Of a stretch of DNA of 64,000 nt, positions 2,635 through 64,000 are shown piece after piece. Source of the stretch: Neoconidiobolus thromboides FSU 785 (lineage: Eukaryota > Fungi > Entomophthoromycota); assembly GCA_025603075.1 (NCBI GenBank), contig MU626317.1, forward strand, positions 1-64,000. The letters run 5' to 3'. Below the pieces are notes generated by a model, which worked only from the letters and a program-made list of their open reading frames with translations, had not been told where the DNA came from and did no database searches. The position numbers and the translations under genes were made by a program. Every line of letters begins with the position of its first letter. Position 1 is the stretch's first letter.

Positions 2635-2734
2635 ATATAAAGGTATTTTTTTAATTTCATACTTCTTCCATTTTTTAAACACTATTTAAATGGAAAGGTT
2701 ATCAGTAGAATTCTTAAAAAATACCTCCCTATAC
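2635..2734 (-). mobile_element. MITE family A copy 6 (diverged)
   Basis: Reverse-complement match: cttccattttttaaacactatttaaatggaaaggttatcagtagaattcttaaaaaatacctccctat. Confidence 0.75.
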
Positions 2735-3001
2735 AATAATAACAAAATAATACTAATTTTATATTTTATTATAATTTTTGATATTATTTATAAATAAATC
2801 CATATCATTTTAGAAAATAAACAATATTTTATTAAAGTTATCATAGTAGTAGTAGTCACGAATAAACAGGTCGTGTTCTTAATTTACTATTAAGTTTGAG
2901 TGGCTTAAACTGACAAATCAAAATAACTCCTAAATTATTAAAAATGCCCCATAAAATTAATAAGGTTTGCTTTTCTTCTAAAAAATAGCAGTAATAGTTA
3001 A

Positions 3002-6000
3002 ATGCCAGAAACTGAAAAAACGCCTTTGGTTTCCAAGGCAGCCATAAGAAAGTATCGAAGTATCCAATCATCTTCTCGAAATAAACAGAAGGGAAGCTTG
3101 ATGCGAAGTAGGACCACTACTGTCAACAAAATTCAATATCGCAAACCAAAGACTTTTAACTCTTTTGATGATGATTCTTCCAGTACAAAATCAGTACCAA
3201 TTAAAGAGAGTACCATCAGGGAGTTAGCGTATGAGAGCTGGAAAGAATCTGCTCATAAAGTTTTTGAAAACTGGGAAGATATGGGACAGAAACCTACTTT
3301 GCGTCAGCGACTTGCTTTTTATTTGGATACTTCTAATGTTGGAAGATACTGGGATCTCTTAGATTTTACTATTGGATTTCTATTTGCTTCTATTTATATT
3401 TGGGTAATTAAGTTCGTTTTTATTCCACTTTATTCTAACATCCTGTAGAATACTCAATATGCTAACCTAGATGGCAAAGATCAAAAAATTCTACCTTTGC
3501 CTCATTTTACTGGATTATTTCTTGGATTATTATTATTGCTTCAATGGTTACCCAGGCTTTATGTTTCTTCAGACATCCTTGAAGAACTTACGAAGCCTTT
3601 TTCTCTACTTACTCTGATTTCAACCATTCCACCAATTGCCATTTTAGCTTGTGATTATTTTATTACTAGCATTAACTTAACAAAGACCTATATGCTTAGT
3701 GGAGGTTTTGTAAGTATTTAATATTATATTATCATTCTTTTTATAGCTTGTTTTAGGCCTACCTATACCCATTTCGTTTCATGAGGCTTCATTATTCTCT
3801 CGTTAAACTCCTTATTCCAGTTAAAAATTCATTTTTTAACTTATCCATGCTGGCTAAAAAAACCATACAGCTTTGTAATCTAATTCTTATTAATTAATTA
3901 AAATTAACTTTTTTAGGCTCAACCATCTTGGCTACCATTTTATTCACTACGTCTATTATCCATATTACAACGATTAAAGAATTGAAGCCAGAAGATGTAA
4001 CTTCACCTTCAGATATACCAACTTTTTTTGACGTCTTCTTTTTCACAGCAGGTAAATAATTAACAAATAAGTATTGTATATTTATTTGACTATTGAAAAA
4101 GTTAGTAGTACTTCTGGTTTTAGCTCAAAAATAGCAGCAAAGAACGTGATAACTAGACTTGTTATTCTTTATATAATGGTAGCTGGAGCTTTATTCTTAC
4201 CTGGTAAGATCAGTGAGCTCTTATCCATTTTGAATAAGCGCTCAGTTTATGATAAGCCTTTTGAAGCTGAGTCAAATGAACAACATATCCTTGTTGTTGG
4301 TGATTTTGATTTTAACTCTTTATTTGAATTTTTGAGAGAATTTTTCTGTGAAGATCATGGTCTCCAAACTATGAATTCTACTATAGTTATTCTTAATCCT
4401 AAAGAGCCATCCGAAGAAATAATCGGAATTCTTAATGATCCAGCATATCACTCTCGTGTTCAATATGTAAAAGGAACACCAACTTCATTCCGTAGTTTAA
4501 CCAAAGCACAAGCCTCTAGAGCTAAAGCATGTTTTGTTCTTACTGATAAATTTTCCAAAAGCGATGATCATGACTCTGATGCAATTTCGGTAATGTTGGC
4601 TTTGGCAATTAAAAGGTTTAATAAGAATATCAAGCTTTATGCACAAGTTAGTCTTCCAGAAAATAAGCCTCATTTCAATCAATTAGCTCGTCAAGTAATT
4701 TGCGTCCAAGAGCTACGCTTTGGTATGACTGCACAGAATTTATTGAATCCTGGATTTTCTACTCTTTTATATTTACTTTCCACTTCATTAACTGAAACTA
4801 CTTGTACCGAGCTCTCCTTATCTTTGAAACTTAAGCCCGAGCTTAGTTGGTTAAAAGAGTATATTGATGGAGCTTCTCATGAAATTTATTCAATCAATTT
4901 TGCTGAATGTTTTGTTGGAATGAAGTTTATCGATGTTGCCGAAATGATTTATCGCTATTTTGGAATTACTCTATTTGCTATTGGCCTCTCTGGTCAAAAG
5001 TCTAGCAGTACTTACAAACGTAAAATTTATCTAAATCCTCATTCCTATAAAATTGTTGGTACTGAAACTGGGTTCATCATGTCATCATCTGCTTATGATG
5101 CCAATCGAATTTCTAAACTAGGTGAAAAGGGAGCCCCATTCGATGAACATTCTTGCCTCTACTCTGAAGACATCAATTATTATTTCGAGGATGGTAAGAG
5201 CACTACCAAATCTACTCCAAAATCTACTCCAAAATCTACTCCAAAATCTGCTGAAATTGCTCCTGAAGCTGTAAAATCTGATAGTCCTATACAAACTCCA
5301 ATCCCATTAGAAAGAACTGAAACTAAAGCGTCAGCTACCGAATCTATGGATAAAGTTAAAAAGAACTTAGTGCTTGACTCTGGTGATAATTCTGAGGACG
5401 AAACTAAAAAGGAAGCACCTAGCAATATTGCAGATCCTTTCTTTAATCTTGGCACTCCATTTGATAACGATATTAGCTCAGAAATTACAGAAGTGGGTAA
5501 TCTTTCAGTTCAGGAAAGAAACATTGCTCAAGTTGTTTCTGAAATGATGAAAGAAAACAGCTATTTTGATGACCTTGGTGCAATTAATCATCTTTCTGGC
5601 CATGTAGTAGTTTGTGATAACTCTGATGTTTTCCCTAAATCTATGGATTATTTTGTAGGCACCCTTCGTGGACCTCATTTAAGTCAACAAATACCAATTG
5701 TTATTCTATCTAAAGCCGCACCAAACCCTCGTCAACGTTATGTGTTAGAGCAATTTGGAGACGTATATTTTATTCAAGGCTCTGCTCTTTCTCGTAAGAT
5801 CCTTTTTTCAGCTGGGATATCCCGTGCCAAGAAAGCTGTTGTACTTTGTGATGATAAAGCCTCAGCTACCTCAAATCCTCGTACTGCCGATGCCTCTTCA
5901 TTGTTGATTGTTTTAAACATAGAATCCATGGCTTTAGATCCTGATTTTTTCGTAGTTGTTGAATTCATTCATAGAGAGAACATGAAATTTGTTGGTGCTG

Positions 6001-61305: not shown

Positions 61306-64000
61306 CTAACTAAGCATATCTTCTCTATCAACCACATTATTATTCATATTACTTCCATCTTCCAATTGTGAAAAGTTCAAGTAATGAGCAGGTCTATGAC
61401 GTTCGTCATAAAATGGTAAAGGTACTTCTAAGCTAAGATGATATTCCTTATCAGGCTGATGAGAAGCACCCTGGAAATTATAATTCCAAATTGAATCAAC
61501 AGGTGAAAGGAAAAATCCGAAAAACTTGTCTGAAAGTAACATTTGAATACGCTCATAATGGGTTGGTAAGTATCCTGCTGGGTTAGTACCGCTTAGATCT
61601 TTGTTGGATGCTCCCCACTCATTACCTGATGGCGTTACTTTGTAACAAGTGAGTGAACAAGAACCTGGCGTAAATGCACAGGTAATAATTACTGAAGTAT
61701 CGATATCCCAACCTGGATAAGAGCCAAGTAATTTAGCATGTGTAGTAACGTCTTGTGGTGAAAGATGGGGTAGCTCATTTGGTAGAGTATGGATCCAGCC
61801 TAAAGGTTCAAGGTCATTCAGCTGCTCATGTTCTGGTGGATTATTTGGAAGATGCACCATTTGGTGAGTACCCCATTGAGGCACCATAACTATGGAACGG
61901 ATCTCTTTAACTTGTGGATTATCTTTTGGCGAAACACCATACAAAAATCCTGAAATTTGAGTTCGAAGATCAGAAATTATAATAAAACGCTTAAGTAAGT
62001 TTTTAGGCAACACATAAGTATACCCTGAATCCTTTAGATCATCACTAGCAACAAAGATGTGTTGGGTTCTCAATTGGAGATTGGTAGATGAAATAGCTCT
62101 TACTCTCCAATCTGTTTTAGAAGAAAAGGTTTGAGTTTCATACCCAGTTGTGGTAGTAGTAATAATTTCGTCTCCATGAATATTATGAGTTTTAGTGGTC
62201 ACTGCCGTCAGTTGGCTTTGTTCTTTAGCTTGCTTTTCGATTTCAGCAATTTGTTGACGTTGAAGCGAAGGAGCTGAAATTTCCATACCAAGGATAATAT
62301 CACGGATTTCAGGTTGAGTCAAAGAAGCAACGTTAACATTATTCTTTTTACCATAGTCTGCAAGGATAAGATCTTTTAAGGCAACCTCCACCTTAATCCA
62401 TTCATCATCTGGTAAAGTGGGCCAGATATGATGTGCTTCAGTGATTGTATTCTTATCAGGACGAAGAATCATTTTAGTCTTATCATTATTCACATGAAGT
62501 GCTCTTAAAATCAAAATCAAACGGAAGAAAGCAGTATATGAGGAAATCGTCGTTAGGAAATTATCATAAAGATTAAACAGACACATCATTGGCTCATTCG
62601 CTTTAAGGATAAGATCTCCAAACTTCTCTACTTTAAGACAAGCTTGGAAAGGTAATTGTAACTCAGAACCTTTGATCACAATATTGGGGAAATCTAAAAG
62701 ATGAACCTCAAGTGGATCCAACATACCCTTACGAGTAACAATGATTTGTCTTGGTTGTTCTTCCACTGGAAGTGAACGAATAAGAGCAGCTACTTCTTCA
62801 GCAGTCTTCCACTTGGCTAATTGGCCAAGACGTTTTTGTCCAGCCCATACCGAAGTATGAATAATCTTAAGGAAGAGATCACCATTACGTGGGTTGAAAA
62901 TAAAGATAGCACCATTGATAGGTTTTGTGGTTAAATTACCTTCAAATGTCTTATGGATGGTAACGCGATAAACATTAGTATCATCCACAAACCAAATAAT
63001 TTGATTTGAGAATAATTCACCGTAATTTGTTGAGTTAAGGTATGGTTCGGTTGGTTCAGATGAATACAATTGCACACCTTTACGAATACGTTCACGGAGT
63101 ACATAGAGAGCAGGATTAGCTTTAATAATCTTACCCATGGCTTGCTGTGTAAGTGGCTTAAGCCCAGGGAACCAATTACCATAAGCAGAATAGAGATTGT
63201 AAGCAAGATCAACACCAATCATCATACCAGTAGGTGAAGGATAGATACTCATATTATCTGTAGTATAATCTAAGAACTTGGCACGAGTGTAACGTTCAAC
63301 ATCATGAGAGTCAAAGTCACCCCAGCGTAATTGGATATCAATCCAGAATTTTTGAATAGTACCATTATCCATTGAATCTTTATTATCATTCAAAAGGGAA
63401 GGTCTGGATACACCCCATTTATAACTAGCAAACAAGAGAATATCCGCACATGAACTGTTCATTTTATAACTTTTACGTGGATGGATCGTTTCTTTTTGTA
63501 CTGACTCAATTTGCAAGGCTTCGGATTCTTGGTCAAACACTTGCACCATATCCATCACCAATGCTTCGTGGATTTTTTGCCACAAATGTGCACGGAAAAT
63601 TTGAATCAAGGAAATTTTAAGTGTTGGGATTTTACCATGCATAAAAATACCTGTTAAATCAAGTTGTACTTGGAAACCAACATACACATTTGAATTGTGG
63701 ACAACGGCATTATTACCAAGTAAAAAGAGCTTGTCGGAATCCTCGTCTAAAGTTATACCACAATATTGGCCTAGAGTTCCAGCTGTTTTAACAACATTAA
63801 ATCTATATTCAACTGGTAAATATTGAACAGCGATTGGGGCCTCCCTGCGTTTGCGATCAATTGATGAGAGACTGAGTACTTTAGTTAAAGCACTGCAAGG
63901 CACAAACGTTACGCAGGACTTAAAGCCATTATTAGTTTCATGATTTGAAACAGAATATTTGATACCAAGGGAGCGAGCTAAAGCTAAGGCACCAGTAACA
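61306..64000 (-). CDS. PRP8: Pre-mRNA splicing factor Prp8, 3' part (5' truncated by the window; includes the intein C-terminus)
   Basis: [42 protein letters not shown]; RNase H-like domain [18 protein letters not shown]; Jab1/MPN domain PLGWIHT; frame stays open to 64000. Confidence 0.98.
63694..64000 (-). mobile_element. Intein (C-terminal part) in PRP8, with LAGLIDADG homing-endonuclease block H
   Basis: In frame: [17 protein letters not shown]...[26 protein letters not shown]|S. Blocks F/G, penultimate His, terminal Asn, and +1 Ser (TCA at 63693-63691). Confidence 0.95.

What the first reader, a model, noticed from the sequence alone, without database searches (positions are those of the whole stretch)
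63650..64000. PRP8 intein at a non-canonical insertion site, with Ser replacing the usual Ala as the +1 nucleophile
Seen: the PRP8 frame reads ...[12 protein letters not shown]|[15 protein letters not shown], so an intein ends immediately before SNVYVG. Known: conserved Prp8 reads ...WWSPTINR-ANVYVGF, and the common fungal PRP8-a intein sits at EKA|SGF, roughly 38 residues upstream by my recollection of the yeast sequence. Inference: this is a separate invasion of the Prp8 catalytic-core linker in a zygomycete lineage, and the host Ala had to become Ser for splicing to work. A few other PRP8 sites (e.g. in chytrids) are published; I cannot tell whether this is one of them.
Basis: partly seen in the sequence, partly recalled or inferred. 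Interest (0 to 1): 0.8.

Follow-up and report, generated by a model that had tools for sequence, protein, structure and literature searches.

The report
PRP8 intein at an uncatalogued site
The window holds the tail of a real, PI-SceI-like self-splicing intein in the spliceosome protein Prp8 of the fungus Neoconidiobolus thromboides, at a site (TINR|S) missing from published lists but shared with many related early-diverging fungi.

Summary
On the minus strand, 63694-63999 encodes the last 102 residues of an intein ending ...[12 protein letters not shown], followed by SNVYVGFQ... of Prp8.

The window matches the public Neoconidiobolus thromboides FSU 785 record exactly. There PRP8 is one uninterrupted 3867-codon ORF with four inteins. 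This one is 458 aa and sits at WWSPTINR|C...VVHN|SNVYVGF, exactly 38 residues after an occupied site a. It matches PI-SceI (the VMA1 intein) over its full length in sequence (E 1.8e-42) and predicted fold (TM 0.78). All splicing residues are present.

The site is none of the published PRP8 sites I could map, but it is not private to this lineage. At least 24 protein clusters carry inteins at the same site: Coemansia, Kickxella, Sorochytrium and one unnamed assembly. All have Ser at +1, and they form one clade. Of 210 unoccupied sites, 206 have Ala.

The annotated gene model hides all four inteins as in-frame "introns". RNA-derived contigs keep the sequence.

The endonuclease is probably weakened, because its first LAGLIDADG motif is off-register.

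Other first-reader notes of this scan flagged the same gene in an overlapping window of this genome.

Verdict: a new member of a known kind, of moderate interest.

The parts
63694..63999 (-). Last 102 codons of the 458-aa intein: the C-terminal part of the LAGLIDADG endonuclease domain plus splicing blocks F and G. The intein's first 356 codons lie beyond the window end (window-equivalent 64000-65067).
   Evidence: Translation. Match to PI-SceI 349-454, E 3e-5. Exact match to L001 10269-10575. Full intein is L001 9202-10575.
63694..63768 (-). Blocks F/G: [25 protein letters not shown], with the penultimate His and terminal Asn.
   Evidence: Conserved in all allelic inteins (H457 and N458 are nearly invariant in alignment A1).
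63691..63693 (-). The +1 extein codon TCA (Ser), the nucleophile for transesterification. The position is Ala in almost all intein-free Prp8 (human A1545, yeast A1617).
61306..63690 (-). Remainder of the Prp8 C-extein (NVYVGF... to the stop codon): end of the linker, then the endonuclease-like, RNase H-like and Jab1/MPN domains.
   Evidence: Pfam U6-snRNA_bdg, PRP8_domainIV, JAB and PROCT. 808/810 identity to the N. thromboides PRP8 model P0078.

Best explanation
This is the 3' end of a canonical class-1 intein of the PI-SceI/VDE type: a Hint splicing domain with an inserted LAGLIDADG endonuclease domain, 458 aa long. It sits in the PRP8 gene of Neoconidiobolus thromboides between Arg and the residue that is normally Ala in the invariant WWSPTINR|ANVYVGF motif. 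That is human R1544|A1545 and yeast R1616|A1617. By my recollection of the published domain boundaries, not tested here, this lies in the linker next to the catalytic core.

The gene is transcribed and translated as one 3867-aa precursor with four inteins.

Inferred mechanism, following the standard pathway:
1. Cys1 makes the N-S acyl shift at Arg-1.
2. The +1 Ser attacks the thioester.
3. The terminal Asn cyclises, helped by the penultimate His.
4. The exteins are joined as ...TINR-SNVYVGF..., giving a 2355-aa Prp8.

The intein belongs to a site-specific family shared by several early-diverging fungal lineages. In all of them the Ala codon has become Ser; in this gene the Ser codon is TCA, which a single GCA-to-TCA base change would give. 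In this host the element now looks mainly vertically inherited. Its base composition equals the host's, and its endonuclease is only partly canonical.
For: Shown:
- The junction reading is in the window.
- The window equals the public N. thromboides record, where PRP8 is a single ORF with junctions TINR|CFAPSTPVYMADG and NNAVVHN|SNVYVGF, 38 aa after site a.
- Pfam Hom_end_hint scores 4.8e-48 and Hom_end 2.3e-14, both above their cut-offs.
- There is a full-length match to PI-SceI at E 1.8e-42, with Cys1, the block B His (NSRH against NATH), the Lys301 equivalent, LAGLIDSDG, and the terminal His-Asn aligned.
- The AlphaFold model has pLDDT 87.6. Its best PDB matches are PI-SceI chains, TM 0.73-0.82, E down to 2.6e-31.
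- 24 alleles at the same site, this one included, all have Cys1 and +1 Ser.
- They form one clade, with SH-like support 99 and SH-aLRT 100.
- Unoccupied sites are Ala in 206 of 210.
- An 11,652-nt contig from a run guessed to be RNA, from the same organism, spans the junction with no joint or mismatch. Its ends coincide with the gene's ends.
- A declared RNA-Seq library holds 57% of the sampled words of the intein segment.
- Intein G+C/GC3 is 0.360/0.271 against 0.368/0.265 for the extein.

Inferred: the splicing chemistry itself, and the mainly vertical inheritance.
Against: - No protein-level evidence of splicing is available.
- Run X2 is only guessed to be RNA.
- Block B has Ser where nearly all allelic inteins have Cys (C73 is nearly invariant). 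This residue is not known to be catalytic.
- The first LAGLIDADG motif reads GLWIAGD instead of GLWIGDG, so endonuclease activity is doubtful.
- Between close relatives the intein segment shows 10 nonsynonymous and 6 synonymous changes, against 3 and 20 in the extein (from a partial list). Constraint is therefore relaxed on at least the endonuclease part.
Confidence: 0.9

Rival explanations
1. The segment is an in-frame spliceosomal intron, as the deposited gene model implies. Model P0078 (2331 aa) keeps only CFAPSTP and [12 protein letters not shown] and removes the 439 codons between them, using a GT...AG pair.
For: The annotated model does this at all four inteins. GTA after ...ACT CCT and AAG before CTC give formal GT/AG boundaries.
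Against: - A 458-codon open frame in an A+T-rich gene.
- Homology to PI-SceI at E 1.8e-42, and the same fold.
- The model leaves intein remnants inside an invariant Prp8 motif.
- RNA-derived contigs are colinear with the genome and show no joints.
Confidence: 0.02
2. It is a real intein, but the site is already catalogued somewhere I could not search (InBase, Poulter et al. 2007, other subscription papers). In that case the finding adds only a new host species.
For: Allelic inteins have been in GenBank proteins since about 2022. Site lettering is inconsistent between papers. My literature access covers open-access papers and bioRxiv only.
Against: - Green 2018's table of 104 Prp8 inteins has no C-extein beginning S/T/C-NVYVG.
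- Sites a, b, c and d, plus one Capsaspora site, map elsewhere. Capsaspora's TINRANVYVGF is intact.
- Green 2019 reports site g at the N-terminal end of Prp8.
- The Anaeramoeba paper's novel site is AKWK|TAEE.
- No paper in the library pairs 'intein' with Conidiobolus, Neoconidiobolus, Coemansia, Kickxella, Dimargaris, Sorochytrium or Smittium, and none pairs both 'intein' and 'Prp8' with Kickxellomycotina or Entomophthoromycotina. The only paper holding intein, Prp8 and Zoopagomycota is a fungal-nomenclature review with one mention of each.
Confidence: 0.3
3. The intein still splices, but its homing endonuclease is dead. It is then a vertically inherited fossil rather than a mobile element.
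For: - Motif 1 is GLWIAGD, with the Asp one position off register.
- Most allelic inteins have lost one or both catalytic Asp residues (GLWIGGG, LAGLIGFG and the like).
- There is an excess of nonsynonymous changes in the endonuclease part between relatives.
- The composition matches the host's.
Against: Motif 2 (LLAGLIDSDG) and the Lys301 equivalent are intact, and the whole 458-aa architecture folds confidently like PI-SceI. An Asp is still present next to the canonical position.
Confidence: 0.55
4. It is a splicing-dead insertion that stays in mature Prp8.
For: No protein data are available. Block B carries Ser where the family has Cys.
Against: - All residues known to be needed are present: Cys1, the block B His, His-Asn, and +1 Ser.
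- The insertion splits an invariant motif of an essential protein's core.
- Splicing blocks are conserved across the family while endonuclease motifs decay. That is the pattern expected if splicing is under selection.
Confidence: 0.03

Closest known systems
PI-SceI / VDE, the Saccharomyces cerevisiae VMA1 intein (PDB 1VDE, 1LWS, 1LWT)
   Same: Same length class (458 against 454 aa) and the same domain order. Full-length sequence match at E 1.8e-42 and predicted-fold match at TM ~0.78. Cys1, an N-x-x-H block B, the Lys301 equivalent, LAGLIDSDG, and a ...FLL.N..VVHN end.
   Different: The host protein is Prp8, not the V-ATPase. The +1 residue is Ser, not Cys. The first LAGLIDADG motif is GLWIAGD, not GLWIGDG. 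Identity is about 27%.
Prp8-a inteins (Cryptococcus neoformans Prp8 intein, PDB 6MX6; Aspergillus, Rhizopus, Phycomyces and others)
   Same: Same host protein and the same linker region. Same +1 Ser and the same class-1 chemistry. One is present in this very gene, 38 residues upstream.
   Different: The insertion point is EKA|SGF, not TINR|SNV. They form a separate branch of the intein tree. The solved site-a structures match only the Hint part of the model (ranks 15-16).
Unannotated allelic inteins in PRP8 of Coemansia spp., Kickxella alabastrina and Sorochytrium milnesiophthora (for example KAJ2777092.1, KAJ1898183.1)
   Same: Identical junctions, TINR|C...HN|S(N/D)VY(V/I)GF. They form one clade with this intein and are 32-44% identical to it.
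   Different: Most are 460-600 aa, with an extra segment before block F. Most have more degenerate endonuclease motifs. The hosts belong to other subphyla or phyla.
Prp8-d intein of wild Bathycoccus (VMDL|CQVF)
   Same: Another non-a site in the same linker, downstream of site a.
   Different: It lies 87 residues after site a, not 38, and uses Cys at +1. N. thromboides has VMDM-VQVF there and no intein.

Membership tests
Class-1 intein (Hint-fold protein-splicing element) | Cys or Ser as the first intein residue | tested here: met
   TINR|CFAPSTPVYMADG in L001, and also in the deposited model P0078. This residue lies outside the window.
Class-1 intein (Hint-fold protein-splicing element) | Block B His (TxxH-type motif) | tested here: met
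   YTSNSRHLLHL aligns with PI-SceI FTCNATHELV. H77 is invariant in the allelic family.
Class-1 intein (Hint-fold protein-splicing element) | Penultimate His and terminal Asn, followed by Ser, Thr or Cys at +1 | tested here: met
   ...AVVHN|S in the window.
Class-1 intein (Hint-fold protein-splicing element) | In-frame insertion whose removal restores a conserved host sequence | tested here: met
   Removing residues 2628-3085 gives WWSPTINR-SNVYVGF. Intein-free Prp8 reads WWSPTINR-ANVYVGF in 206 of 210 cases.
Class-1 intein (Hint-fold protein-splicing element) | Autocatalytic protein splicing shown | not testable with these tools
   Needs a reporter assay or proteomics.
PI-SceI-like LAGLIDADG homing-endonuclease intein | Hom_end_hint and Hom_end domains, with full-length PI-SceI similarity in sequence and fold | tested here: met
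PI-SceI-like LAGLIDADG homing-endonuclease intein | Two LAGLIDADG motifs, each with the catalytic Asp in register | tested here: inconclusive
   Motif 2 (LLAGLIDSDG) is intact. Motif 1 (VAWLVGLWIAGD) has its Asp shifted by one position.
PI-SceI-like LAGLIDADG homing-endonuclease intein | Site-specific cleavage of the empty allele (homing) | not testable with these tools
No empty allele was seen in the four runs laid.
Prp8-a intein | Insertion at FWEKA|SGFE | tested here: not met
   This intein lies 38 residues downstream. Site a holds a different, 241-aa intein.
Other published PRP8 sites (b SEAWR|CWKAN, c LEVH|CLDF, d VMDL|CQVF, the Capsaspora e/f sites, g at the N-terminus, Anaeramoeba AKWK|TAEE) | Same insertion point | tested here: not met
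   Mapping. Only one of the two Capsaspora e/f sites was located (FY|TPKELGG). The other is not at TINR, because Capsaspora reads TINRANVYVGF uninterrupted. Site g was taken from the paper's text only: it is at the N-terminal end of Prp8.

The most novel reading that the evidence does not exclude
TINR|S is a genuinely undescribed PRP8 insertion site. It is one of a dozen or more uncatalogued sites: about 20 well-supported sites in all appear in public Prp8 proteins, against 7-8 published.

Under this reading, Prp8 of zoopagomycete fungi is the most intein-dense eukaryotic gene known. Dimargaris has 9 inteins in a ~6000-aa precursor, and this species has 4.

The inteins have stayed unnoticed partly because gene predictors remove them as in-frame introns, as happened here. 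At several of these sites the +1 nucleophile is a derived substitution of an otherwise conserved extein residue, for example Ala to Ser, Thr to Cys, and Gln or Asp to Ser. This implies that the flank is co-converted with the intein, or that invasion went through rare pre-adapted alleles.
Probability: 0.55. Interest if true: 0.6.

Novelty: new member of a known kind. Interest (0 to 1): 0.42.

Why it matters
- **Prp8 as a hotspot.** Prp8 is the best-known eukaryotic intein hotspot and a proposed antifungal target. An extra, phylogenetically coherent intein family 38 residues from site a, inside an invariant motif of the catalytic-core linker, enlarges the map used to discuss why inteins settle there.
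- **A natural test of the +1 nucleophile.** Every occupied allele has Ser where almost all other eukaryotes have Ala. This is a natural experiment on how an intein acquires a +1 nucleophile at a site that lacks one.
- **Annotation.** The deposited gene model of this species deletes four inteins as false introns. Protein-database surveys therefore under-count inteins in early-diverging fungi.

Tried and rejected
- **Search for this organism's full-length precursor.** A word-indexed search with P0078 residues 1440-1620 was swamped by intein-free Prp8 and did not return it. I obtained the sequence from the public genome record instead.
- **Top two hits of the exhaustive search.** These were a Branchiostoma protein and a fish ankyrin-2. 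They are sums of 10-14 weak repeated matches to residues 36-94 of the query. A pairwise check gave 15/39 identities. I rejected them as unrelated.
- **First reference for mapping.** P0091, my first choice of 'intein-free' reference, itself carries a site-a mini-intein. I replaced it with the N. thromboides extein after excising its four inteins.
- **Singleton sites.** Three singleton 'sites' in my catalogue (reference positions 575, 1426 and 1503, whose first residue is Ala or Ser) may be alignment or gene-model artefacts. I do not count them.
- **P0004.** This 121-aa protein ends HN|CNVYV, with Cys at +1. It comes from a 542-nt contig of an unnamed, fragmented assembly, so its host could not be identified.
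- **Horizontal or vertical history.** N. thromboides nests among Kickxellales inteins only on weakly supported branches. I draw no conclusion.

Full report
**The observation.** The PRP8 frame lies on the minus strand. The open frame runs off the window end and continues down to a stop at 61306. Downstream of the junction, Pfam finds the end of U6-snRNA_bdg, then PRP8_domainIV, JAB and PROCT. The last 40 residues before the junction give a weak Hom_end_hint match. The 102 intein residues in the window align end to end with residues 349-454 of PI-SceI, the yeast VMA1 intein (E 3e-5).

**Organism and the rest of the gene.**
- A search of Prp8 proteins returned P0078, the deposited PRP8 model of Neoconidiobolus thromboides FSU 785 (Entomophthoromycotina). 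It is 808/810 identical to the window's ORF, from [12 protein letters not shown] to the stop.
- The model reads [34 protein letters not shown]. The predictor has removed most of the intein as an in-frame GT...AG 'intron'.
- Fetching the genomic locus of P0078 gave L001. Window 61306-64000 matches it exactly.
- In L001, PRP8 is one uninterrupted ORF of 3867 codons from the first Met. It has four inteins:
  1. SEAWR|CFARG...VAHN|CWKAN, 395 aa.
  2. VVFY|CYGKG...IGHN|CPKELGG, 418 aa.
  3. FWEKA|CFSGA...VVHN|SGFEES, 241 aa (site a).
  4. TINR|CFAPSTPVYMADG...NNAVVHN|SNVYVGF, 458 aa.
- The fourth intein occupies window-equivalent 63694-65067, so only its last 22% lies in the window.
- Exactly 38 extein residues separate site a from it.
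- Excising all four inteins leaves a 2355-aa Prp8.

**What the element is.**
- The 458-aa sequence scores Hom_end_hint 4.8e-48 and Hom_end 2.3e-14, both above Pfam's cut-offs.
- It matches PI-SceI over its whole length at E 1.8e-42.
- An AlphaFold model built on 22 allelic sequences has mean pLDDT 87.6 and pTM 0.87.
- The model's best PDB matches are PI-SceI chains, with E down to 2.6e-31 and TM 0.73-0.82. The solved site-a Prp8 inteins match only the Hint part.
- All splicing residues are present: Cys1, the block B His (NSRH; PI-SceI has NATH), the penultimate His, the terminal Asn, and +1 Ser.
- In the endonuclease domain, the second LAGLIDADG motif (LLAGLIDSDG) and the Lys301 equivalent are intact. 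The first motif reads VAWLVGLWIAGD where PI-SceI has LLGLWIGDG, so the acidic residue is one position out of register. I regard endonuclease activity as doubtful but not excluded.

**Is it an intron, as the gene model says?** No.
- It has an open frame, clear homology and conserved catalytic residues.
- A single 11,652-nt contig from a run guessed to be RNA, from the same organism, covers 62800-64000 with no mismatch and no joint.
- By its coordinates that contig runs from 17 nt inside the 3' end of the CDS to about 65 nt upstream of the start codon. It has the extent of the transcript, not of a genomic contig.
- A library declared as RNA-Seq (a fish gut metagenome) holds 57% of the sampled words of the intein segment.
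- This is good evidence but not read-level evidence.

**Comparison with published sites.**
- Green et al. 2019 (PMC6805012) list seven sites, a to g.
- Monier et al. 2013 (PMC3749507) place b upstream of a and d 87 residues downstream of a, and report e and f in Capsaspora.
- The Green 2018 supplement (PMC5784728) gives the C-exteins SGFEES... for site a, CLDFPN... for the Spizellomyces site, and CWKAN... for Auxenochlorella.
- That supplement contains 74 C-exteins with ...TINRANVYVG... inside, and none that begins S/T/C-NVYVG.
- Capsaspora Prp8 (P0059) has inteins at SEAWR|C and FY|TPKELGG. It reads TINRANVYVGF uninterrupted.
- Site g is reported at the N-terminal end of Prp8 in Acytostelium.
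- The Anaeramoeba paper (PMC10710043) adds AKWK|TAEE.
- TINR|S is therefore none of these.
- No paper in the library pairs 'intein' with Conidiobolus, Neoconidiobolus, Coemansia, Kickxella, Dimargaris, Sorochytrium or Smittium. None pairs both 'intein' and 'Prp8' with Kickxellomycotina or Entomophthoromycotina. The one paper holding intein, Prp8 and Zoopagomycota is a nomenclature review with a single mention of each.
- I could not consult InBase or subscription journals.

**The site is not private to this lineage.**
- An exhaustive HMMER search with the 102-aa fragment found Prp8 proteins of Kickxella alabastrina and Coemansia species. They read WWSPTINR|CL(R/L)P... and ...VVHN|S(N/D)VY(V/I)GF.
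- A follow-up search and junction mapping gave 24 clusters at 90% identity with an intein at this exact position: many Coemansia, Kickxella, Sorochytrium milnesiophthora (Blastocladiomycota) and one unnamed Logan assembly. The inteins are 387-600 aa. All have Cys1 and Ser at +1.
- A metagenomic fungus (L002) carries the closest relative, at 48-49% identity.
- In trees of HE-bearing Prp8 inteins from 13 sites, the 22 TINR-site inteins form one clade. FastTree SH-like support is 99, and IQ-TREE LG+C20 SH-aLRT is 100.
- In the reduced IQ-TREE set, site labels needed only the minimum number of changes. N. thromboides intein 2 also grouped with its own site-mates. Intein 1 sits on a long, unresolved branch.
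- So this is an 'allelic' intein family. It is distinct from site-a inteins and shared across at least two fungal phyla.

**The Ser at +1.**
- Among Prp8 sequences with an unoccupied site, the residue after TINR is Ala in 206, Ser in 3 and Gly in 1.
- The Ala group includes Conidiobolus coronatus, Basidiobolus ranarum and Entomophthora muscae.
- Every occupied allele has Ser.
- Two fragments have Cys: P0004 and the Radiomyces relic.
- The codon here is TCA, one transversion from GCA.
- Splicing needs a nucleophile at +1. That is established intein chemistry, so the correlation is as expected.
- The order of events cannot be resolved here. A rare Ser allele may have been invaded, or Ser may have been brought in by co-conversion of the flank.
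- The three Ser-bearing empty sites are in multi-intein Prp8 proteins from unnamed JGI assemblies. They could be footprints of precise loss.

**State of the element.**
- Its G+C and GC3 match the exteins: 0.360/0.271 against 0.368/0.265.
- In contigs of close relatives (runs X4 and X8) a second variant exists.
- Against the window, the listed differences are 20 synonymous and 3 nonsynonymous in the extein, but 6 and 10 in the intein segment. The list was truncated by the tool.
- Across the family, splicing blocks are conserved while the LAGLIDADG motifs are mostly degenerate.
- This is the usual picture of an old, mainly vertically inherited intein. Splicing is under selection and the endonuclease is decaying.

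**Verdict.** The element is an ordinary class-1, PI-SceI-type intein. The new points are:
- The insertion site is absent from the published catalogues I could read.
- It is an allelic family across early-diverging fungi.
- The Ala-to-Ser change is consistent across all occupied alleles.
- The deposited annotation hides it.

Other first-reader notes of this scan had flagged the same four-intein gene in an overlapping window of the same genome. I re-derived those points independently from the public record.

Noticed in passing
L001 1360-12960 (window-equivalent 61306-72909): PRP8 of N. thromboides is a single 3867-codon ORF with four inteins (395, 418, 241 and 458 aa). The deposited 2331-aa gene model removes all four as in-frame 'introns', leaving remnants such as FWEKA-LHN-SGFEES and SEAWR-CFAP-NIPW.
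   Followed up: yes
Proteins P0029-P0066 and others: Public Prp8 proteins show about 20 distinct, well-supported intein insertion sites, against 7-8 in the papers I read. Examples are AFHL|CREIL, RL|C, FN|TGP, HE|C, EA|S, LF|S, NSS|CADIL and NLT|TKPING. Dimargaris xerosporica and D. verticillata Prp8 (~6000 aa) each carry 9 inteins. Many Coemansia carry 5-6.
   Followed up: partly
L003 about 2650-4830 (Radiomyces spectabilis, 0.7-3 kb downstream of the PRP8 stop): A frameshifted relic of a TINR-family intein, about 40% identical to this one. It ends ...LFLLANHAVVHN|CNVDDGSQAQQKFDGIF, a decayed copy of the C-extein [16 protein letters not shown]. It looks like a pseudogenised partial duplicate of an intein-bearing PRP8 segment. 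Part of it is annotated as a 322-aa 'uncharacterized protein' (P0005).
   Followed up: partly
L001 6544-7797, junction VVFY|C...HN|CPKELGG: At intein 2 the +1 residue is Cys where Prp8 normally has Thr (FYTPKELGG). Capsaspora uses Thr at this site. Across 37 alleles, +1 is Cys in 31, Ser in 3 and Thr in 3. This is a second case of a substituted nucleophile in the same gene.
   Followed up: partly
window about 63541-63564 (extein [13 protein letters not shown]): At published site d (VMDL|CQVF) this species has VMDM-VQVF, with no Cys and no intein. This might make the site refractory to site-d inteins.
   Followed up: no
window 62800-64000 in runs X4 and X8: Close relatives (coded organisms C and D) each hold two variants of this stretch. 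One is near-identical and the other is about 3% (extein) to 8% (intein) diverged. This suggests two haplotypes, or mixed strains.
   Followed up: partly
run X18: A fish-gut metatranscriptome holds 57% of the sampled words of the intein segment. This fungus, or a very close relative, is therefore present and transcribing PRP8 in that sample.
   Followed up: no
L002 (ENA metagenome contig): An uncultured fungus has Prp8 inteins at site a, TINR and site d on one contig. The contig has several frame breaks, which may be assembly errors or introns. Its TINR intein is the closest relative of the one studied here.
   Followed up: partly
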